Below are positions 7,871-45,517 of a stretch of DNA of 64,000 bases, one piece after another. Within the stretch, counting starts at the first letter, position 1; each line of letters begins with the position of its first letter. The notes beneath the pieces were generated by a model. It was not told the DNA's origin and made no database searches. It saw nothing but the letters and a program-made list of their open reading frames with translations. Position numbers and translations under genes: made by a program. Where the stretch lies: positions 176,760 to 240,759 of the IMG/VR virus record IMGVR_UViG_3300027782_000027; one strand, written 5' to 3'.

Positions 7871-7882
7871 TAAGTATAAAAT

Positions 7883-8761: not shown

Positions 8762-8770
8762 TATAATAAT

Positions 8771-9649
8771 ATGGATTTTCAATATAATTTAACAAACAAC
8801 TCTCATAAGGTTTTCATTTACAACAGTGATGGTACTCACACATGTCAATTACCTAAAGGTGTGTCTATGGTATATGTTATTACAATAAGTGCTGGTGGAG
8901 GTGGTGGTGGAGGATTTACATCCGCCAGTGGAGCCGCTGGAGGAGGAGGTGGTGGAGGTACAGGAGCAGTCAACCGTATCATCATTCCAAAAATATTTTT
9001 GACAGATAGTTTAACAGTTGTAGTTGGTGCCGGAGGTGCCGGAGGTGCTGCAAATACTATTGGTTCTAACGGAGGGGCAACATCTGTAGGATTAAATGTG
9101 ACAACTGGTGGAGGTGCTCAATCATTTTTATTAAGTATTACTGCTGGTGGTGGAGGAGGAAACCCCGGAACTGTGGGGGCTGGTGGTACGGGAGGTGCTG
9201 CTGGAGCTACGTCATCGGTAAACAATATGGCTATGACAGCTTTAGGTGAGTTTGTATTAAGAGCTGGTATTGCGGGTGGTGATGGTAATGCGACTGGAGC
9301 TCCATTGGCTGGTATATACGGGTCAGGTATTGTTCCTTTATCCGCTGGTAGAGGTGGTGCGGGTCGTACAGCAGGTAACGTTCCAGCCGCTGGTGGTTCT
9401 ATTTCAGGTAGAGGATTTGTACAAGATGTTCCAGGAGGTACTTCAGGTGGTGGTACAGGTGTTGATGGTATGTTTATGCGGAAACCTTTTGTATCACTCG
9501 GTGGTACAGGTGGTGGTTCATCAACAGGTGTGGGTGGTAACGGTGGTAATGGAGGACCTGGTAGCGGTGGAGGCGGTGGTGGTGCTGGAACAACAGGAGG
9601 AACAGGAGGACGTGGTGGTAATGGCTTAGTAATTATAACTTGTTGGTAA
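8771..9649 (+). CDS. Glycine-rich adhesin-like protein, paralogue 3
   Basis: LPKGVSMVYVITISAGGGGGGG ... GGRGGNGLVIITCW. Confidence 0.8.
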   Translation: MDFQYNLTNNSHKVFIYNSDGTHTCQLPKGVSMVYVITISAGGGGGGGFTSASGAAGGGGGGGTGAVNRIIIPKIFLTDSLTVVVGAGGAGGAANTIGSNGGATSVGLNVTTGGGAQSFLLSITAGGGGGNPGTVGAGGTGGAAGATSSVNNMAMTALGEFVLRAGIAGGDGNATGAPLAGIYGSGIVPLSAGRGGAGRTAGNVPAAGGSISGRGFVQDVPGGTSGGGTGVDGMFMRKPFVSLGGTGGGSSTGVGGNGGNGGPGSGGGGGGAGTTGGTGGRGGNGLVIITCW

Positions 9650-12062: not shown

Positions 12063-12088
12063 AAACTATTAAAAGATAATTATAATAA

Positions 12089-14986: not shown

Positions 14987-17437
14987 TTATGTACACAATA
15001 CTGATATATTGTTGTCTAAACTATTTTCAACATAGATTCTATCATATTTACTATCGTAAGCAACACCTCTTGGTAAATTACCAACTGGAATTGTTTTAAT
15101 AACGGTATTAGTTAATACATCTATAACACTAACATTATCTGTTGTAGCATTACTTACATACAGTGTGTTACTGTTAGTGTCAAATGCCATATCTATTGGA
15201 TTTGTACCAACAGTTATTGTTGTTCCTGTTGTGTTAGTTATTGGGTTAATTGTTATGACTTTATCAGTACCATTTAAAAGTGTGTATACAGTATTATTTA
15301 TTGGTACATATAAACAGTATCTAGGTAAAGAACCTGAAGGCATGTTAATTGTTGATGCGGTTATTCCTTTTATAGTATCTATTGTTACCACAGTACTGCT
15401 TATTGAGTTTGGTACATATACTTGTAAATTATTTTCATTAAATGCTGGTTGAATTGGTCTAGTTCCTGTTGTATAAGTATTTACAATAGTACTTACCGGT
15501 ATTGAACTTACTGTTCCTCCATCATATTCAGCAACATATAATACTTCGTTTATAGTATCATACGTTAATCCAAAAGGTCTTAATCCTGTTGGAATTGTAG
15601 AAATTACCGATAGGGTAAGAGGATTTATAACTGATATGGTATTCGCTGAGAAATTACTAACGTATAATAATTTACTATCGTTACTTAATACCCCACCTCT
15701 AGGTTGAATACCAACTGGGATTGTTGATACAATAGAATAATCATTAATATCAATTACTGAAACATTATTACTTGTTTCGTTAATTACATACATATATTCG
15801 TTTACACTATCAAATACTATAAAGAATGGGCCTGTTCCCACTGATATTGTTTGTATTATGTTTGGACATGATTGTGTTGGTGTTGGTGTTGGACTGAATG
15901 TTGGTGTTGGTGTTGAGGTTGGAACTGGTGAACAGAACTTGCAATCAAATAAATTACCACTTTCAATAGACTCTAAAATATTTGTAGGAGAACCTAAAAT
16001 ATCTGAGACATAAGTAACACACGATGATTTACCATCAATTATAACACTAAATGTTGCACCTGTTGAAAATGGTATATCTCCTGAAACCACATAAGTTGTT
16101 CTACCATTACAGTCTTGTAAAAACTTGGAATATAAACTTGTAAATTTAGATGAGAAAGTATCATATGATACTGTACCACTAACTATAACACCTTTAATTG
16201 CGTTTGTTGGTGTAACACTTGGAGTTGGACTTGGACCAGGATATGAATAACTTACCCCACTAAAAATAAGTGATTTACCATTACACAGAGGTGTAGGTGT
16301 TGGAGTTGTTGTAGGTGTTGTTGTTGGTGTTAATGTCGGTGTTGGAGTTGGAGTTGCTCCTGATGTAATATTACAATCAAATACTGCGGTGAAATCAAAT
16401 GTATCACAAGCATCTGTTAATGTTGGTGTTGGTGTTGGACATGATGTGTTAAAATATGTTTCGTCTAAATCAGGACAAACAGTATTACTACCTGTCGGTC
16501 CAAATAATTGACATTCACCGTTTACACAACTTGATAAACACCATCTTGTTTCTCCTGTGTTATAATATATGTAATACGGATTAGTGTTATCTGGTTTGTA
16601 GAATACGTTTCGTTGACCAAAAACACCATAGTTGTAATAAGTTCCGTCGTAATTTGTATAAGCACTTAAATTTGTAAACACACAATAACTTGACTGAGGA
16701 CATGCAGTATAAACTGGACTTGGAGTAACAGTAGGTGTTGGTGTCGTTGATAAAGTTGGTGTTGGTGTATTACAAAATGTTGGTAGAGGTGTTTTTGTAA
16801 CAGTAGGTGTTGGGGTTTTTGTCGGTGTAATTGATAGTGTTGGGGTTGGAGAACTTGTTACGGTAGGTGTTGGAGTCTTTGTTGGCGTGATACTTGGAGT
16901 TGGTGTAACAGTTCTTGTTGGGGTATGTGTTGGAGTTATACTTGGTGTTGGAGTATTAGTTGGGGTTTTTGTTACTGTAGGTGTATTAGTCGGGGTTTTT
17001 GTTACTGTAGGTGTATTAGTTGGTGTTTTTGTTGGTGTAACAGTTTTTGTTGGAGTATTTGTTGGTGTTTTTGTTGGAGTTTTTGTTGGAGTTGCACTTG
17101 GTGTGACAGTTTTTGTTGGAGTGTTTGTCGGCGTTTTTGTAGGGGTGGCACTCGGAGCGGGTGTAGATGTCGGAGTAGGTGTAGGACCTGGTACACAAGG
17201 ATAGACCGTGGTACATGCAGAACAAGTTAAATAACTTGTTGTATTTGCTGAAATTAAATTATATTCTGTTCTACCACTAACAAATCCTGAAGTTAAATAC
17301 TGTGAACAACCTGTATACTTATCTGTTATTAAATAATAAGATGTGTTAGCAGAGAAGGTTCCCCCAGAATAATTCGACTGAATTTGGAATGTAGTACCAC
17401 TACAACAACCTGAAAATGAATACCAATTTAATGCCAA
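14987..17437 (-). CDS. Cys-rich protein with mucin-like Pro/Thr stalk and C-terminal YVTN/YncE beta-propeller
   Basis: ([10 protein letters not shown])n; repeats such as [53 protein letters not shown]. Confidence 0.85.
16720..17190 (-). repeat. Pro/Thr low-complexity coding repeat
   Basis: Degenerate 12/30-bp units encoding [14 protein letters not shown]. Confidence 0.8.
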
Positions 17438-34549: not shown

Positions 34550-37150
34550 ATGAAAAAAATATTGTTCATTGTACCCCACCTATCAACTGGGGGATTACCG
34601 CAAGTTACGACAAACAAAATCCAACTTCTTAAGGATGACTACATTATTAAGTGTGTGGAGTACGGATGTTATTCATGGGATTTTGTTGTTCAGAAGAACC
34701 GAATTAAGAATTTAATCGGTGAGGAGAATCTTATTACATTATGGGATGACAAGAATGTTTTGATTAATCTTATTGATGAATTCCAACCTGATATTATATC
34801 TATGGAGGAATTCCCTGAGTTTTTTATGGGACATGAAATTACAAGACAGATTTATAGAAAAAATCGTCTGTACAAGATATTTGAAACAACACATGATTCA
34901 AGTTTCAAACCAACATCTAAAATTTGGTTCCCTGATAAGTTTATTTTTGTTAGTGTGTTTAATGCTATTCAGTATTCTATGTTTGATATTCCTTACGAGG
35001 TGATTGAGTACCCCATTGAAAATAGAGAGAAGAGAAAGGAATTGTTCCAAGATAAACTTGGGTTAGATAAGGGATGGAAACATGTTGTTAATGTTGGATT
35101 GTTTACTGAAAGGAAAAACCAAAAGTATATTTTTGAAATTGCTCGTAAGTTAGAAAATAGTAAAATTAAGTTTCATTTTATTGGTAATCAGGCGGATAAC
35201 TTTAAGAGTTACTGGGAACCATTGATGAAAAACAAACCTGAGAACTGTATTGTTTGGGGTGAAAAAGATAATGTAAATGAATTTTTGGAAGCGTCTGATT
35301 TATTCATGTTCCCATCAAAAGGTGATAGAAATAATAAGGAGTTAAACCCGATTGCTATTAAGGAAGCCATTGAATATGGTATTCCGATGATGATGTATAA
35401 TCTTGATGTGTATTGTGGGAAATATGATAAACTACCTCAGGTTAAATTTTTGAATGGGGATATTGATAATGATGTGAATAATATGATGGATATTTTAAAT
35501 ATAGGTGGGGTTGATTCTCTGTTTAATTTTGGTTTTAATGGGGAAACTAATCAGATTACCATAAATTATAATGGTAATGAAAAGTTGAACTTTAATATTA
35601 GTATTAGGGATATGACATCAAAGGCTCCAATGTATTGGTTTAATTTACCTTTGGAGTATCCAATATTTTATTGGACAATACCCATTCCAATTCATATTAA
35701 GAAATTCAAAGACAACCCTAATTTCAGAGGGTTTTTGGTTGAGTTTTATGATGTGGAAACAAACGAATTAGTTTTTGGACAGGAGTTGATTGTTAATAGT
35801 AATTTTTACCCGAGAATTCCTGAATTTAAATTTAAACCTTTGGACTGTAACTATATTAATTACTACGAGTTCTTTGTTGATAGATGTTTTGACGATTTGA
35901 GATTAGAAAATCTTGACACTGTAATTGACATCGGTGCTAATGTCGGATTGTTTGCTAAGTATATGTATTCTGTAAATGCTAAGAAGGTTATTTTAGTTGA
36001 GGCAAATCCATACCTAAGAGAGAGTATTGAATACCATTTAGATAATGATTTGGAAACATCAACTATCTATATGAACCCAGTCTATAAAGAACATACCAAA
36101 ATTGACTTTAGATTTTCAAAAGAAAATTCAACAATTGGTTCAAATGTTTTTGACGGTAATGTTGGTGAATACGGTCAACTTAATAATTTAATCAGTTGTG
36201 ATACAATTACTATTGATGACATTTATAAGGATAATAACTACGGTAGAATATCATTATTTAAATGTGATATTGAAGGTGGTGAGTATCCTATTTTTGAATC
36301 AATTACTGATGAACAGATTGGACTGGTTGATAGGTTCATGGTTGAGTTCCATGAAAACACCAACGGACAAATTAATATTATACTTGAAAAACTTGAAAAG
36401 AATAATTTTGAGTATGACATTATTGTTTATGAGATGGGTAAAAAAATTAGAGCGGATAGAAATGCTAAACATGGTGTAATTTTTGCCAAACCTAAGAATG
36501 TTAAATTAAGGAAACCTGGTACTTTATCATCATCAGTTTATGATGTTACAAAAAGTTTTGAAGAACGATTAGCGGAATATACTGGAGCACCTTACGCAGT
36601 TACAATAGATAATCAAAGTAACGCTTTATTCTTATCGTTGTATTACGAGAAAATAACTGGTAAAACAATTAAAATACCAAGTAGAACATATCCATCAGTT
36701 CCTTGTGAAATTATACATGCTGGTGGTAAGGTTGAATTTGAAGATGTTTATGGGTCAACATTAAAAGGACCTTATCAGTTATCACCGACAAATGTGTGGG
36801 ATTCAGCCTTAAGATTTACTACCGACATGTATATACCAGGAACACATATGTGTCTATCATTTACAGGTCCATACAAACACCTAAAACTTGGTAAGGGTGG
36901 TGCAATCTTAACTGACGACTTTGAAGCTTATAAGTGGTTTAAGAGAGCTAGATATTCAGGTAGAAATGAAGTTTCGTATCATGATGATAATTTTGATATG
37001 TTAGGATGGAATTTTTATATGATGCCTGAAATTGCGTCAAGAGGATTGTTACTTATGAACCAATTTTATAATATGGACGGGACACCTAAACATAATGAGG
37101 ATTTGGAATTACCATACCCTGACTTATCAAAATTTGATGTTTATAAATGA
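34550..37150 (+). CDS. Fusion: GT4 glycosyltransferase + FkbM methyltransferase + DegT/DnrJ-like PLP aminotransferase
   Basis: HLSTGGLP, RKNQ, ELNPIAIKEA; VIDIGANVG, KCDIEGGE; FEERLAEYTG, WDSA, SFTGPYKHL..GKGGAI. Confidence 0.85.
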   Translation: MKKILFIVPHLSTGGLPQVTTNKIQLLKDDYIIKCVEYGCYSWDFVVQKNRIKNLIGEENLITLWDDKNVLINLIDEFQPDIISMEEFPEFFMGHEITRQIYRKNRLYKIFETTHDSSFKPTSKIWFPDKFIFVSVFNAIQYSMFDIPYEVIEYPIENREKRKELFQDKLGLDKGWKHVVNVGLFTERKNQKYIFEIARKLENSKIKFHFIGNQADNFKSYWEPLMKNKPENCIVWGEKDNVNEFLEASDLFMFPSKGDRNNKELNPIAIKEAIEYGIPMMMYNLDVYCGKYDKLPQVKFLNGDIDNDVNNMMDILNIGGVDSLFNFGFNGETNQITINYNGNEKLNFNISIRDMTSKAPMYWFNLPLEYPIFYWTIPIPIHIKKFKDNPNFRGFLVEFYDVETNELVFGQELIVNSNFYPRIPEFKFKPLDCNYINYYEFFVDRCFDDLRLENLDTVIDIGANVGLFAKYMYSVNAKKVILVEANPYLRESIEYHLDNDLETSTIYMNPVYKEHTKIDFRFSKENSTIGSNVFDGNVGEYGQLNNLISCDTITIDDIYKDNNYGRISLFKCDIEGGEYPIFESITDEQIGLVDRFMVEFHENTNGQINIILEKLEKNNFEYDIIVYEMGKKIRADRNAKHGVIFAKPKNVKLRKPGTLSSSVYDVTKSFEERLAEYTGAPYAVTIDNQSNALFLSLYYEKITGKTIKIPSRTYPSVPCEIIHAGGKVEFEDVYGSTLKGPYQLSPTNVWDSALRFTTDMYIPGTHMCLSFTGPYKHLKLGKGGAILTDDFEAYKWFKRARYSGRNEVSYHDDNFDMLGWNFYMMPEIASRGLLLMNQFYNMDGTPKHNEDLELPYPDLSKFDVYK

Positions 37151-37770
37151 TAGTTGGATTCAATGAATATAAACACAAGTATCAATTTAATGTTACAGGT
37201 GTAATTCATGTTGGGGCTCATGTTGGTCAAGAATATAATCAATATATTGAAACATTTGGTTTAATCTCTACATATTGGTTTGAACCAATACCACATGTTT
37301 ATAAAGAACTATCAAAAAATTTAGATGGGAAACCTAACACATTTTATTATAATGTTGCGATAGGTGAAAAAATTGGTATACATAAAATGTATCTTGATGA
37401 TGGTAACGGACAACAAAGTTCATCGTTATTAAAACCAAAAGAACATCAAAATTTTTATCCCCATATCAAATTTAGTGAAGAAAACACTATTAATATTACC
37501 TTGAATACATTAGATTTTTATGGTATAGATAGTTGTAATGTTTTAGTTTTAGATACTCAGGGGTATGAGTTAAATGCTCTTAAGGGTTCAATTAATACCT
37601 TAAAGAATATTGATTATATATTCACAGAATTTAATGTTATTGAAATGTATGATGGTTGTCCATCAATTGAACAACTTGATGAGTTTTTACAACCTTTTGG
37701 TTTTTACAGACAAGAAACATGGAATGTTGATGGAGTATGGGGTGATGCATTTTACTTAAAAAAAATATGA
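37147..37770 (+). CDS. FkbM-family methyltransferase
   Basis: IHVGAHVGQE, FEP, LDTQGYELNALKG. Confidence 0.85.
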   Translation: MIVGFNEYKHKYQFNVTGVIHVGAHVGQEYNQYIETFGLISTYWFEPIPHVYKELSKNLDGKPNTFYYNVAIGEKIGIHKMYLDDGNGQQSSSLLKPKEHQNFYPHIKFSEENTINITLNTLDFYGIDSCNVLVLDTQGYELNALKGSINTLKNIDYIFTEFNVIEMYDGCPSIEQLDEFLQPFGFYRQETWNVDGVWGDAFYLKKI

Positions 37771-38354
37771 TTAAAAAAGCTTTTATCGGTAATGGGGGAC
37801 ATTTGAGAGAGGTAATCGCTCATACAAATTATGATGTTATTAGATTTGTTGAAGACGAGTATTTCAAGGGGGAATATAATACATTCCCACTATCACAATT
37901 CAATTCAAAAGAATACACGATTATGATTGCAATTGCTGATAGTCAAGTTAGGTCAAGAATTCAAAAATCATTACCTGAAGACACTAAATATTTTTCATTC
38001 ATTGACCCATCTGCAATTTTAATGGATAGAAATATTGTAATCGGTGATGGTTCATTTATTGGTGCTAATTGTGTTATAACTACTAATGTGAAGATTGGTA
38101 ATCATTCTATTTTAAATAGAAATGTAAATATTGGACATGACGTGGTAATAGGTGATTGTTTTAGTGCTATGGCTGGTTCTGTGGTATCAGGGAACGTCTC
38201 AATTGGTAATAATTGTTATATGGGTAACAATTCATCAATACGTGAAAAAACAACCATTTGTGATGATGTGGTAATTGGAATGAATGGAAGTGTTGTTAAG
38301 AATATTGATAAACCTGGAACTTATGTTGGAGTTCCTGTTAATAAAATTAAATAA
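37767..38354 (+). CDS. Sugar acetyltransferase (PglD/NeuD-like, hexapeptide repeats)
   Basis: GNGGH, IAIAD, IGHDVVIGD, YVGVP. Confidence 0.9.
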   Translation: MIKKAFIGNGGHLREVIAHTNYDVIRFVEDEYFKGEYNTFPLSQFNSKEYTIMIAIADSQVRSRIQKSLPEDTKYFSFIDPSAILMDRNIVIGDGSFIGANCVITTNVKIGNHSILNRNVNIGHDVVIGDCFSAMAGSVVSGNVSIGNNCYMGNNSSIREKTTICDDVVIGMNGSVVKNIDKPGTYVGVPVNKIK

Positions 38355-40087
38355 TGGAAAAATTACTTTCGGTTATAGTATCGGCATATAATTTTGAAAA
38401 ATACCTTGAAGAGTGTATAGATTCAATTTATAACCAAAAAATTACCTACGGATATGAGGTAATTGTTAGAGATGATTGTTCAAAAGATAATACTAAAGAT
38501 GTTTTAGTTAAATTAAAAGAAAAATACCCTGATTTAAGAGTATTAAATGGGGATGTTAATTTGGGAGCATTAGAAAATATAAGAACTTTATTAAACTCTT
38601 GCACGACAAAATATATTGCGTATATTGATGGTGATGATTATTTTGACAATTATACAATTTTAAATGAAGAGGTTGAATTTTTAGAGAATAGCCCAAATTA
38701 TAGTATGGTATGTACAGGAACAAGATATTTGTACCCTGACGGGACAAAAATACCAACAGTACCTGAGTTATTTATTAGTTCATTCCTTGATGATGTTACA
38801 ACAGATGATTTACTCACAATCAATCATGCTTCTTTCTCAAGGGTGTTTAGAAACATACCAAATTTAATAAAAAATTATTTTAAAAATTTACCTTATGTTG
38901 ATTGGCCACTTAACTACGAAATTAGTAAACATGGTTTAATTAAATGTATTCATAAATGTGGAGGCATTTATAGAATATCTAATGACGGTATGTTTTCAAA
39001 TGTATCTGAAGAGGAAAAAAACAAACAAAATTTAATTGTTATCAATGAACTTAAACGACAAAGTATTAAAGATAAGTTTAAAACAATAACCATAGTTGAT
39101 TGTTTTATACACAATCAAAATGTTTTAAATAAATTAGAATTATGTATTAATAATTTAAAAAAATATAATCACACAATACTTTTAGTATCTAATACAATTG
39201 TTCCTGAACATATAATAAAAAATGTTGATTATCATCTATATAATTCTAATAATATTCTTTTTGAGGGTGAGTATACTAATTCAGAACCAGTTATTTTTTG
39301 GAAAAATCTTGATGGATTAACAGTACATGAAGTTATAAATACAATACAGAAACATGGATTACCCGTTATGGTTAATTTATTTAATTCATTAGACTTATGT
39401 AAATCACTTGGGTTTACACACTTCCAAAGAATTGAAGTTGATGATTTGTATAGTGAGAAAGGTTATGAATATATAATAACTGTTCCTTTAATTTGTTCTG
39501 AAAAAAATAAAAAGGGAATGTTTTATTTTAATGAGGGTAGAGATGTCTCGTTCCATTATTTTTATAGTGAGATAGATTATTTCCTACAGATAATTAATAG
39601 GGTTAGTTGTGAAGAAGATTATAAAAATTATTTAGTAAATCACGGATATGGTACTGATTTTATAAATGTTGAAAAATATCTATATGATAACATAAACAGA
39701 AATGATTATGGTTTATTAATAAGGAAAAATGGTGAGGAGGAAATGAATTTTGATTTCCAGGGGACTTTATGGAATACAGAAACTACAGGTAGTAATATAT
39801 CGTCTAAATTTAGAGGATGTTCAACAAAACTTTATAATATACCGGGACAAGAGTCTACGATGTTGTTGTCTTACAACCACAACAATTTTAAATCTGAAAG
39901 AAAGATAGTTGTTAATTTTTTAGATGGTAATACTGAAACTTATTATCATAGTTTGGAAAATTATGGTCATTGGTCTTTTAATATTTTAAATAATGTTGAA
40001 AAAATATTAGTTTATGATAACCAAAACGATGAATTTTTGTATGAAATTATAAACCAAAATGTTCTTGATTATATTATTTTTTCATGA
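38354..40087 (+). CDS. GT2 glycosyltransferase with additional C-terminal domain
   Basis: SVIVSAYN, DDCSKD, YIAYIDGDDY. Confidence 0.85.
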   Translation: MEKLLSVIVSAYNFEKYLEECIDSIYNQKITYGYEVIVRDDCSKDNTKDVLVKLKEKYPDLRVLNGDVNLGALENIRTLLNSCTTKYIAYIDGDDYFDNYTILNEEVEFLENSPNYSMVCTGTRYLYPDGTKIPTVPELFISSFLDDVTTDDLLTINHASFSRVFRNIPNLIKNYFKNLPYVDWPLNYEISKHGLIKCIHKCGGIYRISNDGMFSNVSEEEKNKQNLIVINELKRQSIKDKFKTITIVDCFIHNQNVLNKLELCINNLKKYNHTILLVSNTIVPEHIIKNVDYHLYNSNNILFEGEYTNSEPVIFWKNLDGLTVHEVINTIQKHGLPVMVNLFNSLDLCKSLGFTHFQRIEVDDLYSEKGYEYIITVPLICSEKNKKGMFYFNEGRDVSFHYFYSEIDYFLQIINRVSCEEDYKNYLVNHGYGTDFINVEKYLYDNINRNDYGLLIRKNGEEEMNFDFQGTLWNTETTGSNISSKFRGCSTKLYNIPGQESTMLLSYNHNNFKSERKIVVNFLDGNTETYYHSLENYGHWSFNILNNVEKILVYDNQNDEFLYEIINQNVLDYIIFS

Positions 40088-40851
40088 TTGGATTAACAAT
40101 AACAACTTGTAAAAGAATTGATTTGTTTGAAAAAACAATACTAACATTTGTGAACGAATGTGAAGATTGTAATTTAATTGATATAATAATTCATTATGAT
40201 GATTCTTCATCTTTGGAAGATAGAGATAAGATGTTTTCATTATTGAATAGATTATTTCCCGATACTCTAATAGTCTCTAAAAGATTTAATCCAAATTCGT
40301 TTAACACTAATAGAAGACATTTAGAGATAATGAAAAAATGGAAAGAAGATATTAAATTTTTTAATATTGATTATGTTTTTCATTTAGAAGATGATTGGTT
40401 ATTTGAAAACAAATTTAGTATCCAAGAAGGTGTTGAATTGTTAAAAAATAATAATGAAATTGCTATGGTTGGATTTTCATGGAAAAAAAAGATATTCCCT
40501 AAAGAATTATTTGAACCAAGAATTATTGGTAATTTTTGGGAGTGGTATTATTCTGAAAAACATTACTTGAATGAACCTTTGTTTAATGATACGGTTGAAG
40601 AAACTTTACACGAAGTTAAGGGTTTATGGATTAAATATATTAACTGGCCTTACTTTGGATTTAGACCGGCAATTCATGATGTGAATAAATTAAATGAGAT
40701 TGAAACGTTTAATAATAATATGGATTCTTTTGAATTAGAATTTGCAATAAGATTTGCAAAAAAATTCAAATCTTTTTTACATTTAGAAAGAATTTGTTAT
40801 CATATTGGAGATGATAATTCATCATATAATTTAAATAACTCTTTAAGATAA
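40084..40851 (+). CDS. GT-A fold glycosyltransferase
   Basis: ITTCKR, YDDSS, YVFHLEDDW, YHIG. Confidence 0.75.
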   Translation: MIGLTITTCKRIDLFEKTILTFVNECEDCNLIDIIIHYDDSSSLEDRDKMFSLLNRLFPDTLIVSKRFNPNSFNTNRRHLEIMKKWKEDIKFFNIDYVFHLEDDWLFENKFSIQEGVELLKNNNEIAMVGFSWKKKIFPKELFEPRIIGNFWEWYYSEKHYLNEPLFNDTVEETLHEVKGLWIKYINWPYFGFRPAIHDVNKLNEIETFNNNMDSFELEFAIRFAKKFKSFLHLERICYHIGDDNSSYNLNNSLR

Positions 40852-41423
40852 TGGATTATAACTTTTTATGGGTTCCAAAAACTACTTATCACAGGTCAGC
40901 ACAAAGTCAATTTGTTGTTGATGTCTTTCCAAAGGTATTAAAAAACTTTGAATTAATAATTGAAATTGGTACATTCACAGGTGCCTTTACTTTATGGTTG
41001 TCTGAGAATAAATCTGATAATTGTAAAATAATTTCTTATGATATTAATCCTGATTATTGTGAAGTTAATAATCTTAAACATACTGAATTAAGAATTGGCG
41101 ACTGTTTTGATATTGATGTCATAAAAGATATTTGTGATTTAATTAAAAATTCAGGTAGAACACTTTTTTTATGTGACGGGGGGGATAAAGAACTTGAGTT
41201 TAGATTGTATTCAAAGTATCTAAAAACAAACGATGTTATTATGCTTCATGATTATTCACATAGTGAAGAGGAATATAATATTATTAAAGAAAAAATAAAT
41301 TGGCCAACAAATTCAGAATCACACTATAAAAATATTGAAAGATACTTACCTGAACTTAATTTAACTACATTTATGTATGATGATTTTAAACAAGTTTTAT
41401 GGGGTTCGTTTATAAAAAATTGA
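40851..41423 (+). CDS. SAM-dependent methyltransferase (CmcI/Methyltransf_24-like)
   Basis: IIEIGTFTG, SYDI, CDGG, MLHD. Confidence 0.75.
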   Translation: MDYNFLWVPKTTYHRSAQSQFVVDVFPKVLKNFELIIEIGTFTGAFTLWLSENKSDNCKIISYDINPDYCEVNNLKHTELRIGDCFDIDVIKDICDLIKNSGRTLFLCDGGDKELEFRLYSKYLKTNDVIMLHDYSHSEEEYNIIKEKINWPTNSESHYKNIERYLPELNLTTFMYDDFKQVLWGSFIKN

Positions 41424-41424
41424 T

Positions 41425-42144
41425 ATGAATTATAAGATTAAATTAGTTCATTTACAGACAACACAGAATGAACATAGAGAAAAACTATCACGAAAATCTA
41501 TACAACAAGTAATACCTTACGGTATTGAATATGTTTTACATCAGAACGAGTTATATACTTCCTTACCTCCAGTTCATACAAGTGTTAGACCACATAATGT
41601 TAGAATCGGTAAGTATGAAGATATTAATGACCCTGAATATGGGAACGCATTAACTCCGGCTCACTACGGATGTTTTGAGGCGTTTAAAATTGGTATCCTA
41701 TCAGAATTTGATAATGATTTGGACTTCTTAATTGTTTGTGAAGGTGATTGTATAATAGAAGTTCCGATAGAAGAATTTATTGATAAAGTTAATCATGTCT
41801 GTGGTATTGTTAATCAGGAAGATATTTCTTATTTTTCGTTTGGTGATACTAAAACTTTAGATTATGGGTGGCATCAATCTGACGTTGTTAGAGAAATACC
41901 GAACCAAGATTTATTGTTTATTACTAATAAAATAATTGGTTTACAGTGTATTATGTTTTCAAAAAAATCACGTAAAACAATTATGAGCCAGTTGAGAACA
42001 CATAGATGGGATTGTGCTGATACATTTTTTAATATAATATGTGCAGAACAGAGATTAACTATGGGTGTTTTAAAGAAAAGAATAACAACTCAGGTAGATG
42101 GGGAATCATTCATAGATAAAGAATATAAAGTTTTTACAAAATAA
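41425..42144 (+). CDS. GT25-like glycosyltransferase
   Basis: HYGCFEAF, LIVCEGDC. Confidence 0.55.
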   Translation: MNYKIKLVHLQTTQNEHREKLSRKSIQQVIPYGIEYVLHQNELYTSLPPVHTSVRPHNVRIGKYEDINDPEYGNALTPAHYGCFEAFKIGILSEFDNDLDFLIVCEGDCIIEVPIEEFIDKVNHVCGIVNQEDISYFSFGDTKTLDYGWHQSDVVREIPNQDLLFITNKIIGLQCIMFSKKSRKTIMSQLRTHRWDCADTFFNIICAEQRLTMGVLKKRITTQVDGESFIDKEYKVFTK

Positions 42145-42145
42145 T

Positions 42146-42691
42146 ATGGCACACGAACAACAGAAGAATTTTTTTAAAAGAGTTAAAGAAAAATACCCAA
42201 AATATTTCACAGATGTAAAAGTTTTAGATATCGGTTCTTTGGATATAAATGGGTCAGTAAGAGATTTATTTGATTACCCATTTTATTACGTTGGATTAGA
42301 TTTGGCACCTGGAAAAAATGTTGATGTAATTTGTCCTGGACATTTATATGATTGTGGATTTCAGTTTGATGTTGTTTCATCGGGTGAATGTTTTGAACAT
42401 GATATGTATTACGCAAGAACTATACAGAATATGGTTAAACTTCTTAAGTCTGGTGGTTTAATGGTTTTTACTTGTGCGTCAACAGGGAGACATGAACATG
42501 GTACATTAAGAACTACTCCTGATAACGCACCTTTCTTGGGTGATATTAGTGAAAAGTGGGCAAATTACTATAAGAATTTAACTGAAGATGATATTAGGTC
42601 AGTTATTGATGTTAATGATATTTTTAATAACTTTGGATTTGAATATGAACCAGTAACTTGTGATTTATATTTTTGGGGGATTAAAAAATGA
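42146..42691 (+). CDS. Class I SAM-dependent methyltransferase
   Basis: VLDIGSLDING, FDVVSSGECFEHD, LKSGG. Confidence 0.85.
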   Translation: MAHEQQKNFFKRVKEKYPKYFTDVKVLDIGSLDINGSVRDLFDYPFYYVGLDLAPGKNVDVICPGHLYDCGFQFDVVSSGECFEHDMYYARTIQNMVKLLKSGGLMVFTCASTGRHEHGTLRTTPDNAPFLGDISEKWANYYKNLTEDDIRSVIDVNDIFNNFGFEYEPVTCDLYFWGIKK

Positions 42692-43383
42692 TTGATGTTG
42701 ATGTTATTTGTCTTACTAATACAACTTCCGATGAATTATATTGGATGACAAGACGAACATTAACAACTATACACGATTCTGAAAAAGAGTATAAATTTCA
42801 TGTTCACTTAATTGAGACTAATTCCCAAAGTAATTATGATTTTTCAGATATTGTTGAAAATTATGTAAAACCAAATGAAAAATTTAATTACAATAGATTT
42901 TTAAATCATTCTTATCCTTATGTAAAACATAAATGGGTTTTAATTACTAACAATGATGTAAGATATGAAAGAGGTTGGTTTTCAAAGATAATCGAGGTTT
43001 ACAACAAAAGACCTGATGTTGAATCTTTTTCACCTAAATGTCCGATACTTTATTCAAAATATTTTTTTAATGATTTTTTAGGTGGTGATTTAGATTTTCA
43101 TGAAAGTGTTGGGACTAGTGTTCACTTAATGGGTTGGTCATTAGTTATGAAAAAAAGAGTTTTTGACATTGTTTATCCGTGGGATGAAAACTTTGATATG
43201 TACTACCAAGATAATGATTATGCTGAAATTTTATTAAAAAATAATATTAAACACGGTTTGGTTAGGGACTCAATTGCAACTCATTTAGAATCACAAACTA
43301 TAAAATATAAATTTAATTCAAATACAATTGATAATCTTAGAGTGAAAAATTATTTTTACAATAAATGGGGAAAAGAAATTTAA
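42688..43383 (+). CDS. GT2-family glycosyltransferase
   Basis: FNYNRFLN, ITNNDV, WDENFDMYYQDND. Confidence 0.8.
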   Translation: MIDVDVICLTNTTSDELYWMTRRTLTTIHDSEKEYKFHVHLIETNSQSNYDFSDIVENYVKPNEKFNYNRFLNHSYPYVKHKWVLITNNDVRYERGWFSKIIEVYNKRPDVESFSPKCPILYSKYFFNDFLGGDLDFHESVGTSVHLMGWSLVMKKRVFDIVYPWDENFDMYYQDNDYAEILLKNNIKHGLVRDSIATHLESQTIKYKFNSNTIDNLRVKNYFYNKWGKEI

Positions 43384-43384
43384 T

Positions 43385-45517
43385 ATGAAAATTACACAAG
43401 TAACACCAGGAATAATTACGATACCACCAAACGGTTGGGGGGCGGTTGAAAAGGTAATATGGGAATATTACAACAACATTAAAGAATTAGGTCACGAATG
43501 TGATATAAAGTATCTTAACGATATTGATATTAATAATAGTGATATTGTTCATATTCATATGGCTAATTTGGCAATTGATGCCGCTAATAAAGGAATACCA
43601 TATATTTTTTCATTACATGACCACCACGTTGTTTATTATGGTAAAGATTCATCTAACTACCAACAAAATTTAGATGCAATTAAAAGGTCTGTGGTATCAT
43701 TTACACATGCTGAGTTTTTAGTTGATTACTTTGATGAAACAGACAAGTTATTCTACCTATCACATGGTGTTAATACAGAGTTCTTTAAGAATGACAAACC
43801 GAAAAGAACGGAACACAAATTATTGTGTTTAGCAAACAATGGTATTGGTGGTGATTCAACACATGACAGGAAAGGATTTAGATATGCAATTGAGGCGGCA
43901 ATTAAATTAGATTTACCCATTACAGTTGCCGGTCCTGAAAACAATAGAATATTCTTTGAACATCATAATGACTTATTGAATTATGATAAGTTAACATTAA
44001 TGTTTTCAAATCCAAACGAAGAACAGATATTAGAACTATATAAAAGTCATTCTATATTCTTACACCCTTCTATGTTAGAAGCGGGACATCCGAACCTAAC
44101 ATTACTTGAGGCGGTGTCTTGTAACATGCCGGTTGTTGGTACTTACTTAGGTTCACAAACGATAGAAGGGATGGTAGTGGTTGAAAGAGATGTAAATCAA
44201 ATTGTTACTGGTATTAAACAAGTTATTGATAATTATGATTTATATCTAAGTAACACTGAATTAGATAGACAAAAATACGATTGGAGTGTTATTACCAAAA
44301 GAATGGTTAGAATCTATGAGGACCTTATTAATAGTAGAAAAAATTTGAATAGTCTTGAAACTAAACAAAGATTTGATAAAGTATTTGAAAATACTGAAAT
44401 AAAACCAAAAGATATGGTTGAAAAAATTGAAGTGATTAATCACTACATCAACGGAGCGTTAGTTGAAATTAAAGGTAATACTGATAAGAAATATTTAGTT
44501 GAGTTTTGGAATCAGAATAGTGACTGCGAATATCGTGAGGAGATTGGGTGTAATATGTGGGTTAGATTGAATAAAAAGTATTTTGATGAGTATACTTTAA
44601 AAATTTACTCTGAAGGTAATTTAATTAGTGAAAAGAAATATGATGCTGAAAATAAACGAGTATACATTGCATTAGATTCAAAATCATTGGGTGATACATT
44701 TGCTTGGGTACCATATGCCGAAGAATTCAGAAAGAAACACAACTGTAAGGTTATATGTTCAACGTTCTTTAACGATTTGTTTGTAAAACAATATCCTGAG
44801 ATACAATTTGTTTCACCTGGTAGTACGGTTCATAATCTATATGCAATGTATGAGATAGGTTGGTTCTACGATGGAGATAATGTTAAAATGGATAGACACC
44901 CAAGTGATTTCAAATTAGGTCCATTACAAAAAACCGCAACAGACATTTTAGGTTTGGAATATAAAGAAGTTAAACCTTTAATCAAAAATCCAAACAAGAT
45001 AAAGAAAAAACGAGTTGGACTGGGTATTCACTCAACGGCTCAATCAAAGTATTGGAATAATCCAAAGGGTTGGCGAGATATTACTGATTATCTAATATCT
45101 CTTGGGTATGAGGTGATTATCTATTCAAAAGAGGAAGATGGGTATATGGGTAATTTTTATCCAAAAGGCGCTAAACAAAACCCTCCTGGTTCAATCTACA
45201 AACTTATAGAAGAGTTATCAACTTGTGAATTCTTTATAGGTATATCAAGTGGTATTTCATGGGTTACTTGGGCATTGGATATCCCAACAGTTTTGATTTC
45301 AGGATTTACTGAAGAGTTTAACGAACCTTATGATAATGTATATAAGGTAAGTGCTCCTGAAAATACTTGCAGAGGATGTGCTAATAAATTTAGATTAGAC
45401 CCAGGTGATTGGAATTGGTGTCCAATAAATAAGGGGAATGATAAGATGTTTGAATGTTCTAAAAAGATAACATCTGAGATGGTAAAAGATAAAATTATTG
45501 AATTACTTGGTAAGTAA
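43385..45517 (+). CDS. GT4 fused to Aah/TibC-like autotransporter O-heptosyltransferase domain
   Basis: PPNGWGAVE, EAGHPNLTLLEA; SLGDTFAW, HSTAQSKYWNNPKGW, FIGISSGISW, ISGFT, CRGC..DWNWCP..FECSKKIT. Confidence 0.85.
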   Translation: MKITQVTPGIITIPPNGWGAVEKVIWEYYNNIKELGHECDIKYLNDIDINNSDIVHIHMANLAIDAANKGIPYIFSLHDHHVVYYGKDSSNYQQNLDAIKRSVVSFTHAEFLVDYFDETDKLFYLSHGVNTEFFKNDKPKRTEHKLLCLANNGIGGDSTHDRKGFRYAIEAAIKLDLPITVAGPENNRIFFEHHNDLLNYDKLTLMFSNPNEEQILELYKSHSIFLHPSMLEAGHPNLTLLEAVSCNMPVVGTYLGSQTIEGMVVVERDVNQIVTGIKQVIDNYDLYLSNTELDRQKYDWSVITKRMVRIYEDLINSRKNLNSLETKQRFDKVFENTEIKPKDMVEKIEVINHYINGALVEIKGNTDKKYLVEFWNQNSDCEYREEIGCNMWVRLNKKYFDEYTLKIYSEGNLISEKKYDAENKRVYIALDSKSLGDTFAWVPYAEEFRKKHNCKVICSTFFNDLFVKQYPEIQFVSPGSTVHNLYAMYEIGWFYDGDNVKMDRHPSDFKLGPLQKTATDILGLEYKEVKPLIKNPNKIKKKRVGLGIHSTAQSKYWNNPKGWRDITDYLISLGYEVIIYSKEEDGYMGNFYPKGAKQNPPGSIYKLIEELSTCEFFIGISSGISWVTWALDIPTVLISGFTEEFNEPYDNVYKVSAPENTCRGCANKFRLDPGDWNWCPINKGNDKMFECSKKITSEMVKDKIIELLGK

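What the first reader, a model, noticed from the sequence alone, without database searches (positions are those of the whole stretch)
34550..45517. Candidate phage protein O-glycosylation system: Aah/TibC-like enzyme, 11-kb glycan locus and Ser/Thr-rich fibres
Seen: ten co-oriented genes encode about seven GT domains, four methyltransferase domains, an aminotransferase and an acetyltransferase. The last gene carries the full Aah/TibC motif set (LGD, STAQxKYWNNPxGW, SSGxSW, ISGFT, C-x2-C-x13-C-x11-C). Established: Aah/TibC are cytoplasmic, iron-binding enzymes that hyper-heptosylate Ser residues in repeats of autotransporter adhesins. Inference: the phage primes the more than 1000 Ser/Thr of its Gly-Ser fibre and PT stalks, then extends and methylates the glycans, giving a glycan-coated virion similar in concept to giant-virus fibrils. 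Alternatives are host-surface modification (superinfection exclusion) or DNA glycosylation.
Basis: partly seen in the sequence, partly recalled or inferred. Interest (0 to 1): 0.82.

Follow-up and report, generated by a model that had tools for sequence, protein, structure and literature searches.

The report
Phage fibre glycosylation cassette, TibC-like
A freshwater jumbo phage carries a mobile 11-kb block of ten sugar-handling genes whose key enzyme belongs to a new branch of the TibC/Aah protein-glycosylating family; in phages and bacteria this branch sits next to giant proline-free collagen-like Gly-Ser/Thr fibre genes, so it most likely sugar-coats those fibres, though no experiment shows this yet.

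Summary
Ten tightly packed, co-oriented genes (34550-45517) encode soluble glycosyltransferases, four methyltransferase domains, a NeuD/PglD-type acetyltransferase and a short DegT-like domain. The last gene fuses a GT4 module to a complete TibC/Aah-like module (TIGR04414 265 bits against a cut-off of 200; predicted fold TM 0.84 to TibC).

New here:
1. The phage enzyme falls in a well-supported clade, separate from the classical autotransporter heptosyltransferases. In that clade 37 of 54 genes have a (Gly-Ser/Thr-Ser/Thr)n collagen-like gene in the fetched locus, in phages and bacteria. Outside it the figure is 1 of 60, and the five neighbours tested there all carry AIDA repeats.
2. The adenine-binding Arg of TibC is invariant outside the clade but lost in the window protein and in most of the clade. 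Heptose should therefore not be assumed.
3. The window's fibre gene is at least 4,388 codons, with at least 1,111 uninterrupted Gly-X-Y triplets and 2,603 Ser/Thr.
4. The 11-kb block is a discrete cassette. A distantly related phage shares about 90% nucleotide identity only over it, and there it lies directly after a 3,414-aa fibre gene within tail genes.

The glycosylated-fibre reading is well supported by comparative genomics but is biochemically untested. The link to the Pro-Thr stalks is not supported.

The parts
34550..37150 (+). g1, 866 aa. GT4-type glycosyltransferase (about aa 1-320), FkbM methyltransferase (aa 457-622), and a short DegT-like PLP domain (aa about 640-866) with a Lys motif.
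   Evidence: Pfam; NCBIfam; PDB aminotransferase hits, weak; translation. Present in every strain variant whose fetched locus covers this position.
37147..37770 (+). g2, 207 aa, FkbM-family methyltransferase. A variable cassette gene.
   Evidence: Pfam 59 bits; TIGR01444; absent or replaced in some strains.
37767..38354 (+). g3, 195 aa, NeuD/PglB/VioB-type hexapeptide sugar N-acetyltransferase. Variable.
   Evidence: Hexapep and PglD_N; TIGR03570 at 144 bits against a 160.8 cut-off; absent in some strains.
38354..40087 (+). g4, 577 aa. GT2 (GT-A) domain at aa 1-161 plus a C-terminal domain. That domain is fused N-terminally to TibC-like modules in other phages.
   Evidence: Pfam; PDB chondroitin synthase and others; L022/L025 fusion proteins match g4 aa 245-423.
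40084..40851 (+). g5, 255 aa, probable GT-A-like glycosyltransferase. This is a lead only.
   Evidence: No HMM hit. Atlas neighbours are GT2/GT25-like viral proteins. Variable between strains.
40851..41423 (+). g6, 190 aa, class I SAM methyltransferase (FtsJ-like). Variable.
   Evidence: Pfam.
41425..42144 (+). g7, 239 aa, probable GT25-like glycosyltransferase. This is a lead only. A conserved core gene of the cassette.
   Evidence: Atlas. Found at 93-98% identity in 18 of the 20 other strain variants; the two without it (L002, L014) hold too little upstream DNA.
42146..42691 (+). g8, 181 aa, SAM methyltransferase (Methyltransf_23/11-like, below cut-offs). Variable.
   Evidence: Pfam.
42688..43383 (+). 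g9, 231 aa, GT2-like glycosyltransferase. Its homologue is fused to the N-terminus of the g10 homologue in L018.
   Evidence: Atlas score 0.99 to viral GT2 clusters; 950-aa fusion in L018; variable.
43385..44338 (+). g10 N-terminal module (aa 1-318): GT4 glycosyltransferase of the MshA/BshA-like retaining fold. A low-confidence linker (aa 320-344) follows.
   Evidence: Pfam; AF2 model; Foldseek.
44426..45517 (+). g10 C-terminal module (aa 348-710): a complete TibC/Aah-like protein O-glycosyltransferase. It comprises a beta-barrel (348-418) and a catalytic domain (425-710) carrying D437, T551, K555, W626, thumb Y587-M588 and a Cys4 finger (662/665/679/691). Leu607 stands in place of TibC Arg286.
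3..6326 (+). The last 2,107 codons of a giant collagen-like fibre gene, the proposed acceptor. It has 614 Gly-X-Y triplets (X = Ser 71% / Thr 23%; Y = Ser 80%), no proline and 1,187 Ser/Thr. The gene runs on upstream of the window: at least 4,388 codons in the source contig, with at least 1,111 uninterrupted triplets.
3159..3509 (+). 117-aa beta-sandwich domain inserted in the fibre. A diverged second copy lies at 5490-5819. The same fold recurs in viral collagen-repeat and tail-fibre proteins.
   Evidence: Alignment A3; AF2 pLDDT 91.5; BFVD matches with TMq 0.65-0.83.
6974..9649 (+). Context: three paralogous Gly-rich proteins (298, 292 and 292 aa). The first, the only one scanned, carries Pfam Gly_rich_2 and matches PHROG minor tail protein / tail fibre assembly families. 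They lie directly downstream of the fibre gene.
14987..17437 (-). Pro-Thr-linker protein with a YNCE/lactonase-type beta-propeller. It is a possible second acceptor, but no specific evidence supports that.
   Evidence: PT-rich ORFs are common in control loci through synteny. A PT-rich gene is adjacent to a TibC-like gene only in the L026 group.

Best explanation
The block 34550-45517 is a self-contained, horizontally mobile cassette for cytoplasmic O-glycosylation of the phage's own collagen-like fibre protein.

Shown:
- The C-terminal module of g10 is a full TibC/Aah-type enzyme. It has the beta-barrel, GT-B-like core, catalytic Asp, beta-phosphate Thr/Lys, sugar-contacting Trp, Cys4 finger and hydrophobic thumb.
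- It belongs to a distinct clade whose conserved genomic partner is a (Gly-Ser/Thr-Ser/Thr)n repeat protein, not an AIDA-type autotransporter.

Inferred:
- In the infected cell this module transfers the first sugar to Ser/Thr hydroxyls of the Gly-X-Y repeats of the fibre, which is at least 4,388 aa long, before or during virion assembly.
- The fused GT4 module and the other GT4, GT2 and GT25-like enzymes (g1, g4, g5, g7, g9) extend the glycan.
- The DegT-like domain and the NeuD/PglD-like acetyltransferase supply or modify an acetamido sugar.
- The four methyltransferase domains cap it with methyl groups.

The priming donor is uncertain. The ADP-reading Arg is replaced by Leu, so it may not be ADP-heptose.

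The likely result is a heavily glycosylated, possibly triple-helical, fibre on the virion. Its glycan varies between strains because the accessory genes of the cassette are swapped.
For: Enzyme identity. PDB sequence match to TibC, E 8.6e-52. TIGR04414 at 265 bits against a 200 cut-off. AF2 model with pLDDT above 90 over the module, and Foldseek top hit TibC 4RAP with TM 0.84 and rmsd 2.9 over 374 columns. Catalytic and structural residues are conserved (residue roles from PMC4358343).

Linkage to the fibre genes:
- In distant phage loci anchored on the TibC-like gene, a Gly-Ser/Thr triplet ORF lies 57 bp to 7.3 kb away in 8 of 12 dereplicated groups.
- The same holds in the cultured Microcystis phage Mel-JY01 and in the 735-kb phage LR756501.
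- No such ORF occurs in 138 control loci (2.6 Mb) anchored on replication genes of the same phage clade (Fisher p = 5e-10).
- In the reverse direction, 7 of 120 loci picked only by a Gly-Ser/Thr triplet DNA pattern hold a TibC-like domain, against 0 of 138 controls. No other cassette domain was found near such ORFs as often: 0-4 of 120.

Family tree. A clade with SH-aLRT 100 and branch length 0.78 holds all phage sequences plus bacterial ones. Inside it 37 of 54 have a Gly-Ser/Thr ORF in the fetched locus; outside it 1 of 60 (p = 1e-15). Five out-of-clade neighbours were tested. All carry AIDA repeats, and three also the autotransporter beta-domain, that is, the kind of protein the family is known to glycosylate. 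For this family the gene next door is therefore a good guide to the substrate.

The repeat is the shared element. The non-repeat parts of the neighbouring proteins are mostly unrelated: S74-chaperone tail fibres in L022/L025, and small secreted proteins or lipoproteins in Methylococcales and other bacteria.

One unit. A phage with only 24-28% identical SbcC/SbcD shares 86-91% nucleotide identity with the window over 34551-45497 and nowhere else. The block has GC 0.30 in a backbone of 0.37-0.38. Its order there is: tail-fibre-like gene, 3,414-aa Gly-Ser fibre gene, cassette, neck-protein-like gene, tail sheath.

Cytoplasmic, protein-directed. None of the ten proteins has a membrane segment, and no flippase, polymerase or lipid-carrier priming enzyme was detected in the block.
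Against: - No biochemical, proteomic or imaging data exist. No RNA run could be listed.
- In the window's own phage the fibre gene ends 28 kb upstream of the cassette, with replication genes between them.
- Control loci share synteny and are not independent samples, so the p-values overstate independence.
- Gly-Ser/Thr fibre genes and TibC-like genes may both simply reside in tail modules.
- 17 of 54 in-clade loci show no such ORF, though many of these loci are short.
- Loss of Arg286 could mean altered or weakened donor binding.
- That the fibre is in the virion rests on neighbours and on comparisons between predicted folds.
- Only 64 kb of a 241-kb genome was examined.
Confidence: 0.6

Rival explanations
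1. The cassette glycosylates other phage proteins, such as the capsid, the tail tube, the Gly-rich tail proteins or the Pro-Thr beta-propeller protein. On this reading its nearness to Gly-Ser/Thr fibre genes only reflects shared residence in structural or hypervariable modules.
For: In the window the cassette is 28 kb from the fibre gene. A Pro-Thr-rich gene is the immediate neighbour in the L026 group. Mycobacteriophage glycans sit on capsid and tail-tube C-termini, as cited in PMC12619734.
Against: In bacteria the same clade sits within about 80-970 bp of small secreted Gly-Thr-Ser repeat proteins that have no phage structural context. The repeat is the only element the neighbours share. PT-rich ORFs are equally common in control loci.
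Confidence: 0.12
2. The cassette modifies the host surface during infection, acting on the LPS O-chain, the capsule or host secreted adhesins, to block superinfection. This is the usual reading of glycosyltransferases found in phage tail-fibre regions.
For: This is the published interpretation for glycosyltransferases in the hypervariable tail-fibre regions of aquatic myophages (PMC7029224). Strain-level swapping of cassette genes resembles O-antigen loci. Classical TibC/Aah enzymes modify bacterial adhesins.
Against: All ten proteins are soluble. No lipid-carrier priming transferase, flippase, polymerase or ligase was detected in the block. The key enzyme is a protein O-glycosyltransferase whose clade partners with Gly-Ser/Thr repeat proteins, and the phage itself encodes an enormous one.
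Confidence: 0.12
3. The enzymes glycosylate phage DNA (hypermodified bases) to evade restriction.
For: Phage glycosyltransferases often do this (bioRxiv 10.1101/2023.12.21.572611). Several DNA methyltransferases lie nearby.
Against: The methyltransferases in the window are N6/N4 types. No C5-methyltransferase, TET/JBP-type dioxygenase or hydroxymethylase was found in the window. TibC-fold enzymes act on protein Ser. The cassette lies among tail genes in the second phage.
Confidence: 0.03
4. The cassette makes a free or otherwise non-protein-bound methylated oligosaccharide or nucleotide sugar, acting as an auxiliary metabolic function. The TibC-like module would then be inactive or repurposed.
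For: The conserved adenine-binding Arg is lost. The DegT-like domain is truncated.
Against: The catalytic Asp, Thr/Lys, Trp and Cys4 finger are almost invariant across 270 domains, which indicates purifying selection on an active enzyme. g10 is 92-97% identical across strains (74% in L018) while neighbouring genes are swapped.
Confidence: 0.05

Closest known systems
Bacterial autotransporter heptosyltransferases (BAHT: Aah, TibC; NCBIfam TIGR04414; PDB 4RAP/4RB4)
   Same: The module architecture and predicted fold are the same: beta-barrel, GT-B-like core, thumb and Cys4 iron finger. The catalytic Asp, the beta-phosphate Thr/Lys and the sugar-contacting Trp are conserved. The enzyme is a soluble cytoplasmic protein encoded close to a highly repetitive Ser-rich candidate acceptor.
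   Different: - It forms a separate clade.
- The partner is a Gly-X-Y collagen-like repeat protein, not an AIDA-type beta-helix autotransporter.
- The ADP-reading Arg286 is lost, Leu607 here.
- Finger spacing is x13 against an invariant x15.
- An iron-finger Phe (window position 676) is Trp in the clade.
- It is fused to a GT4 module and encoded by phages.
- Donor sugar and oligomeric state are unknown.
Mycobacteriophage virion glycosylation (Freeman et al. 2023, known here only as cited in PMC12619734)
   Same: Phage-encoded glycosyltransferases decorate the phage's own structural proteins in the cytoplasm. The idea of a glycan shield on the virion is shared.
   Different: The enzymes differ, since TibC-like enzymes are not reported there. 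The acceptors there are the C-termini of capsid and tail tube, not a collagen-like fibre. The loci are much smaller. I did not read the primary paper.
Giant-virus fibril glycosylation clusters (Mimivirus-type; recalled from my own knowledge, not tested here)
   Same: Multi-gene viral clusters combine an aminotransferase, an acetyltransferase, glycosyltransferases and methyltransferases to coat virion fibrils. Giant viruses also encode collagen-repeat proteins that carry the same inserted beta-sandwich fold.
   Different: The hosts are eukaryotic. No TibC-like enzyme is known there. The similarity is one of concept and of domain fold only.
Glycosylated bacterial collagen-like proteins such as Bacillus BclA (recalled from my own knowledge)
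   Same: Gly-X-Thr collagen-like repeats of a surface filament are O-glycosylated on the repeat Thr.
   Different: BclA repeats are Pro-rich and short, and other glycosyltransferases act on them. Here the repeats are Pro-free, Ser-dominated and up to more than 1,100 triplets long.

Membership tests
BAHT (Aah/TibC) protein O-heptosyltransferases | Scores above the curated cut-off of the family model TIGR04414 | tested here: met
   265 bits against a cut-off of 200; aa 367-705 cover model positions 26-372 of 374.
BAHT (Aah/TibC) protein O-heptosyltransferases | Protomer fold: N-terminal beta-barrel, GT-B-like catalytic domain, beta-hairpin thumb and iron-finger insertion | tested here: met
   AF2 model (pLDDT above 90 over aa 348-710) matches TibC 4RAP with TM 0.84 and rmsd 2.9 A over 374 columns. 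This rests on a predicted model only.
BAHT (Aah/TibC) protein O-heptosyltransferases | Catalytic base Asp110, beta-phosphate ligands Thr226/Lys230, and heptose-O4 ligand Trp305 | tested here: met
   D437, T551, K555 and W626. These are invariant or nearly so in 270 related domains.
BAHT (Aah/TibC) protein O-heptosyltransferases | Arg286 contacting adenine N1, the basis of ADP-sugar specificity | tested here: not met
   Leu607 in the window. Arg is present in 60 of 60 out-of-clade sequences but in only 14 of 54 in the clade. The role of the residue is taken from PMC4358343.
BAHT (Aah/TibC) protein O-heptosyltransferases | Four Cys of the 1Fe-0S iron finger | tested here: met
   C662, C665, C679 and C691 are present. 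Spacing is x2/x13/x11 against x2/x15/x11 in all 60 classical sequences. Iron binding itself is not testable here.
BAHT (Aah/TibC) protein O-heptosyltransferases | Dodecameric ring built through the thumb tip (Phe265-Val266) and Phe368 | not testable with these tools
   A hydrophobic thumb pair (Y587-M588) and F689 are present. The effect of the 345-aa N-terminal GT4 fusion on ring assembly is unknown.
BAHT (Aah/TibC) protein O-heptosyltransferases | Acceptor is an adjacent AIDA/TibA-type autotransporter with beta-helix repeats | tested here: not met
   Pfam scans covering most ORFs of 100 aa or more in the window gave no AIDA or autotransporter beta-domain hit. Clade partners are Pfam Collagen-type Gly-Ser/Thr repeat proteins. 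The five out-of-clade neighbours tested carry AIDA repeats, three of them with the autotransporter beta-domain.
BAHT (Aah/TibC) protein O-heptosyltransferases | Transfers heptose from ADP-glycero-manno-heptose | not testable with these tools
   No heptose-pathway gene was found in the window. Only 64 kb of 241 kb was seen.
Collagen triple-helix repeat proteins (Pfam PF01391), for the proposed acceptor | Uninterrupted Gly-X-Y periodicity | tested here: met
   Runs of 350, 189, 47, 18 and 10 triplets in the window. At least 1,111 uninterrupted triplets in the source contig. Related fibre ORFs score 48-286 bits on Pfam Collagen (cut-off 27.2).
Collagen triple-helix repeat proteins (Pfam PF01391), for the proposed acceptor | Pro/Hyp-rich X and Y positions that stabilise the helix | tested here: not met
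   Two Pro in 4,388 residues. X and Y are more than 90% Ser/Thr. Whether a triple helix forms is not testable here.
Phage DNA glycosylation systems | A route to a hydroxymethylated base (hydroxymethylase, or C5-methyltransferase plus TET/JBP dioxygenase) next to the glycosyltransferases | tested here: not met
   Only N6/N4 DNA methyltransferases occur in the window, and no such enzymes were found. The rest of the genome was not seen.
Lipid-linked polysaccharide (O-antigen/capsule) loci | Membrane priming transferase plus a flippase/polymerase or ABC exporter | tested here: not met
   None of the ten products has a membrane segment, and no such family was hit.

The most novel reading that the evidence does not exclude
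A previously unrecognised branch of the TibC/Aah family is the dedicated O-glycosyltransferase of prokaryotic and phage collagen-like proteins. In jumbo phages it would load thousands of Ser/Thr on micron-scale, proline-free Gly-X-Y fibres (at least 1,111 uninterrupted triplets) with a strain-variable, methylated glycan. That would yield bottle-brush or mucin-like virion fibres in which the sugars stand in for hydroxyproline to stabilise the helix. The whole 11-kb pathway would move between unrelated phages as a 'fibre glycotype' cassette. If so, many phage glycosyltransferase genes now read as host-LPS modifiers would be fibre-modifying enzymes instead.
Probability: 0.4. Interest if true: 0.88.

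Novelty: new variant of a known kind. Interest (0 to 1): 0.75.

Why it matters
Protein glycosylation of phage virions is known from very few cases. Glycosyltransferases next to tail-fibre genes in abundant aquatic phages are routinely read as host-surface or DNA modifiers (for example PMC7029224).

This locus offers a concrete and testable alternative. It names an enzyme family with a solved structure and known catalytic residues, an acceptor motif (Gly-Ser/Thr-Ser/Thr triplets), a cultured carrier (Microcystis phage Mel-JY01) and bacterial counterparts such as Methylococcales lipoproteins.

Three things would follow if it is right:
- The substrate range of the TibC/Aah family would extend from virulence autotransporters to collagen-like proteins.
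- It would explain how proline-free collagen-like repeats far longer than animal collagen helices can be functional.
- It would identify a mobile, hypervariable determinant of the virion surface, relevant to host recognition, to particle behaviour in lake water and to engineered glyco-fibres.

The family is large: 1,405 clusters at 50% identity match the module. The phage recurs in freshwater and lake metagenomes from many studies between 2017 and 2023.

Tried and rejected
- Literature. Searches for TibC or heptosyltransferase with phage, virus, jumbo phage or collagen-like found no paper linking this family to phages or collagen repeats. 'Mel-JY01' returned nothing.
- Close DNA relatives. Megablast against GenBank phages found none.
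- Pro-Thr association. Counting PT-rich ORFs near TibC-like genes was dropped as evidence, because PT-rich ORFs are frequent in control loci through conserved synteny.
- Heptose supply. The 'cytidylyltransferase-like' gene near the Mel-JY01 enzyme is not recognisably HldE; it gives only a weak CTP_transf_like hit.
- Fibre insert domain against the PDB. No significant match. Only predicted viral models match.
- A3 profile search. A search of the fibre proteins with a profile built from alignment A3 returned nothing, not even the window's own domain, so I take it as a technical failure. It was replaced by BLAST of repeat-masked sequences.
- Promoter/terminator and tRNA scans. Uninformative: promoter-like sites were at the shuffled level, and no tRNA was found.
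- Expression. No RNA run was listed, and read laying was not used.
- N-terminus of the window's fibre gene. Not reached, because the N-terminal domain of the sister fibre has relatives only in its own lineage.
- PHROG/Pfam on many window ORFs. No hits, so the capsid, portal and terminase of this phage were not located within the window.

Full report
**What the window is.** The window is AT-rich (about 30% GC) and encodes phage functions: primase, exonuclease, SbcCD, a sigma factor, a RuvC-like resolvase and several DNA methyltransferases. It is the last 64 kb of the 240,759-bp viral contig IMGVR_UViG_3300027782_000027. Near-identical sequence recurs in freshwater and lake metagenomes from many studies. 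This is a freshwater jumbo phage whose host is unknown. SprB-type repeats and Pro-Thr linkers, together with the relatives of a second carrier phage, hint at Bacteroidota.

**The observation.** Ten + strand ORFs occupy 34550-45517. Their junctions are 4- or 1-nt overlaps or 1-nt gaps, and none of the products has a membrane segment. Pfam and NCBIfam give the following:

| Gene | Domains |
|---|---|
| g1 | GT4 + FkbM methyltransferase + short DegT-like domain that keeps the PLP-lysine motif |
| g2 | FkbM methyltransferase |
| g3 | NeuD/PglB/VioB-type acetyltransferase |
| g4 | GT2 plus an extra C-terminal domain |
| g6, g8 | SAM methyltransferases |
| g10 | GT4 plus a GT9/TibC-like module |
| g5, g7, g9 | no HMM hit; nearest protein-atlas clusters are viral GT2/GT25-like proteins |

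**The key enzyme.** Residues 391-704 of g10 align with TibC residues 62-383 at E 8.6e-52. The curated Aah/TibC model TIGR04414 scores 265 bits against a cut-off of 200.
- An AlphaFold model built on 30 homologues has mean pLDDT 86.8. It shows a GT4 module (aa 1-318), a low-confidence linker (320-344), an eight-strand beta-barrel (348-418) and the catalytic domain (425-710).
- Foldseek places TibC 4RAP first, with TM 0.84 and rmsd 2.9 A over 374 columns. The N-terminal module resembles the MshA/BshA GT4 enzymes.
- I mapped residues using the roles defined in the TibC structure paper (PMC4358343). The catalytic Asp110, Thr226, Lys230, Trp305, the four iron-finger Cys, Phe368 and a hydrophobic thumb tip are all present.
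- Arg286 is the exception. It reads the adenine of ADP-heptose, and here it is Leu607.

**The proposed acceptor.** The large ORF at the start of the window is a strict Gly-X-Y repeat.
- It has 614 triplets in runs of 350, 189, 47, 18 and 10. X is Ser 71% / Thr 23% and Y is Ser 80%. There is no proline.
- In the source contig the ORF is at least 4,388 codons and still open at the 5' end. It holds at least 1,111 uninterrupted triplets, 2,603 Ser/Thr and two Pro.
- Two inserted domains of about 110 aa interrupt the repeats. The first folds confidently (pLDDT 91.5) into a beta-sandwich. The best structural matches, at TMq 0.65-0.83, are domains of viral collagen triple-helix repeat proteins, a lambda Stf-like side tail fibre, a cyanophage baseplate-wedge tail-fibre connector and giant-virus collagen proteins.
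- Directly downstream lie three Gly-rich paralogues; the first, the only one scanned, matches minor-tail / tail-fibre-assembly families.

**Co-occurrence in phages.** Scanning IMG/VR with g10 gave 37 loci.
- In the distant ones (34-48% identity in the TibC-like module), a Gly-Ser/Thr triplet ORF lies within the 10-kb flanks in 8 of 12 dereplicated groups.
- The ORF is immediately downstream in L022 and L024/L025 (57-69 bp) and immediately upstream in L037.
- The L022 and L025 fibre ORFs carry Pfam Collagen plus a C-terminal Peptidase_S74 intramolecular chaperone, a hallmark of phage tail fibres and spikes.
- Among GenBank phages, the cultured Microcystis phage Mel-JY01 has a 1,016-codon Gly-Ser ORF, then a 'structural protein', then a 1,226-aa GT4...TibC-like protein (annotated only as an FkbM methyltransferase). 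These lie beside the terminase, portal and capsid genes.
- The 735-kb phage LR756501 has a collagen-like ORF 4.7 kb away. LR756504 has none within 20 kb.
- The controls were 138 loci (2.6 Mb) anchored on the sigma-factor and SbcC genes of the same phage clade. They contain no Gly-Ser/Thr triplet ORF and no TibC-like domain. They share synteny, so they show that such ORFs are not scattered everywhere rather than giving independent counts.
- In the reverse direction, 120 loci chosen only by a degenerate DNA pattern for six Gly-(Ser/Thr)-(Ser/Thr) triplets (998 kb) hold a TibC-like domain in 7 cases. The other cassette domains appear in 0-4.

**Bacteria and the family tree.** A scan of one genome per bacterial species returned 80 loci.
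- In the closest ones (Methylococcales, Burkholderiaceae, several gammaproteobacterial MAGs, Arenicellales, Pseudobdellovibrionaceae), the TibC-like gene lies 83-970 bp from a small protein made of a signal peptide or lipobox and (GTS)n or (GSS)n repeats. These repeats score on Pfam Collagen.
- I built a maximum-likelihood tree of 114 modules, rooted on an E. coli plasmid Aah-like gene. It shows one clade (SH-aLRT 100, stem length 0.78) that holds every phage sequence and these bacterial ones.
- Inside the clade, 37 of 54 have a Gly-Ser/Thr ORF in the fetched locus. Outside it, 1 of 60 does.
- Five out-of-clade neighbours were tested, and all carry AIDA repeats; three also have the autotransporter beta-domain. 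That is the classical enzyme-substrate gene pair. For this family the adjacent gene is therefore a reliable guide to the acceptor, and the clade has switched partner.
- The non-repeat parts of the partner proteins are mostly unrelated between lineages, so the repeat is the common element.
- Outside the clade the Glu285-Arg286 pair is invariant (59/60 and 60/60). Inside it Arg survives in 14 of 54.
- The finger spacing is fixed at x15 outside the clade and variable inside.
- The one alignment column that cleanly separates the two groups is an iron-finger Phe/Trp. That motif is implicated in TibA recognition.

**One mobile unit.** Contig IMGVR_UViG_3300042569_002280 shares nucleotide similarity with the window only over window 34551-45497, at 86-91% identity. 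That span runs from the g1 start codon to within 20 nt of the g10 stop, and neither flank matches.
- The backbone of that contig has 0.37-0.38 GC against 0.30 for the block. Its SbcC and SbcD are 24-28% identical to the window's.
- The gene order there is: a gene with a tail-fibre N-terminal domain, a complete 3,414-aa Gly-Ser fibre gene, an 81-aa ORF, g1-g10, then a neck-protein-like gene and a tail sheath.
It has moved between distantly related phages, and in one of them it is embedded in the tail module right after a fibre gene.
- Wherever the fetched locus reaches them, strain variants keep g1, g4, g7 and g10, while g2, g3, g5, g6, g8 and g9 are variably replaced. This is the pattern expected of a diversifying surface glycan.

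**Mechanism.**
- *Shown:* enzyme family, fold and catalytic residues; solubility of all ten products; cassette boundaries; the clade-specific gene partnership.
- *Inferred:* the TibC-like module primes Ser/Thr of the Gly-X-Y repeats in the cytoplasm. The fused GT4 module and the other glycosyltransferases extend the glycan. The DegT-like and acetyltransferase domains provide an acetamido sugar. The methyltransferases cap it.
- *Unknown:* the priming donor, given the lost Arg; whether the repeats form a triple helix; whether the fibre is on the head or the tail.
- The idea that the sugars replace hydroxyproline in stabilising the helix draws on glycosylated Thr in other collagens, which I recall from memory. 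It is speculation.

**Rivals.**
- *Host-surface modification* is the customary reading. It lacks any membrane or export component here.
- *DNA glycosylation* lacks a hydroxymethyl-base route in the window and fits neither the enzyme family nor the tail-module location.
- *Glycosylation of other virion proteins* cannot be excluded and may coexist with fibre glycosylation. The Pro-Thr protein is a candidate without specific support.

**Novelty.** Databases already auto-name some phage proteins 'Glycosyltransferase Aah/TibC'. I found no paper in the searchable library that connects this family to phages or to collagen-like repeats. I file it as a new variant of a known kind. It has the same fold and chemistry class as the known family, but a new clade, a new class of acceptor, an altered donor site, new fusions and a viral, mobile context.

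**Limits.** All evidence is computational. Flanks were capped at 10-20 kb, so genome-wide co-occurrence was not measured. The tree used the quick search with SH-aLRT support only and has several long branches.

Noticed in passing
window 3-6326; L300 2-13165: The fibre gene continues upstream of the window. It is at least 4,388 codons and still open, with one uninterrupted run of at least 1,111 Gly-X-Y triplets (3,333 residues). From memory, that is about three times the triple-helical domain of fibrillar animal collagens. Its N-terminus was not reached.
   Followed up: partly
L010 1003-12113, L315, L398 (IMGVR_UViG_3300042569_002280): The 11-kb cassette is about 90% nt-identical in a phage whose backbone is otherwise very different (GC 0.37-0.38, SbcCD 24-28% identical). 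This indicates recent horizontal transfer of the whole block. The relatives of that phage's tail sheath and neck genes are Flavobacterium, Tenacibaculum and Lak phages.
   Followed up: yes
L001-L021 against window 34550-45517: The cassette is a mosaic between strains. Wherever the fetched locus reaches them, g1, g4, g7 and g10 are present, while g2, g3, g5, g6, g8 and g9 are replaced by other genes in many strains. The distance from the g1 start to g10 varies from about 7.7 to 9.8 kb.
   Followed up: partly
L158 (PP395634.1, Microcystis phage Mel-JY01) 2-3049: A 1,016-codon Gly-Ser/Thr triplet ORF on the + strand is not annotated as such. The record has two CDSs on the opposite strand (1-651, 739-2298) and only a short + strand CDS (2519-3052). 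The TibC-like module is hidden in a 1,226-aa protein annotated 'methyltransferase FkbM'.
   Followed up: partly
window 59066-59941 and 59938-60795: A protein with an RXYLT1_C-like (glycosyltransferase-related) domain overlaps by 4 nt an N6/N4 DNA methyltransferase gene. I cannot explain this pairing. It lies outside the cassette.
   Followed up: no
window 46450-47289, 53020-53787, 59938-60795: Three DNA methyltransferases sit within 15 kb downstream of the cassette: one D12/Dam class and two N6_N4 class.
   Followed up: no
window 33168-34088: A full-length DnaJ (J domain, CxxCxGxG zinc domain and C-terminal domain) is encoded just upstream of the cassette, separated from it only by a 128-aa ORF on the opposite strand (34091-34477). 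A DnaJ-like gene also lies near the TibC-like gene in L023.
   Followed up: no
window 9659-9922; L026 4864-6699; L031 827-1714: A small 88-aa ORF shares a domain of about 75 aa (33% identity) with the N-termini of Pro-Thr-rich proteins that sit near TibC-like genes in other phages.
   Followed up: no
P0002, P0122, P0262 and others: Some proteins in the representative library carry two to four tandem TibC-like modules. Module-bearing proteins reach more than 2,000 aa, with many different fusions (FkbM, other methyltransferases, GT4, GT2).
   Followed up: no
L369 (Bordetella sputigena) 11071-12369: This is the single out-of-clade TibC-like gene with a Gly/Ser repeat neighbour. That neighbour combines (SSGSGG)n repeats with a PA-IIL fucose-binding lectin domain.
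   Followed up: no
L348-L353, L359, L378 (Selenomonadales/Acidaminococcaceae): These genomes carry two tandem paralogous TibC-like genes side by side, next to an AIDA-repeat protein (shown for L353). The two copies form sister clades in the tree.
   Followed up: no
window 9978-12062 and 14987-17437: A weak SprB-repeat hit (24.2 bits, below the 28-bit cut-off) and long Pro-Thr linkers joined to a YNCE/lactonase-type beta-propeller. Both features are typical of Bacteroidota surface proteins and may hint at the host.
   Followed up: no
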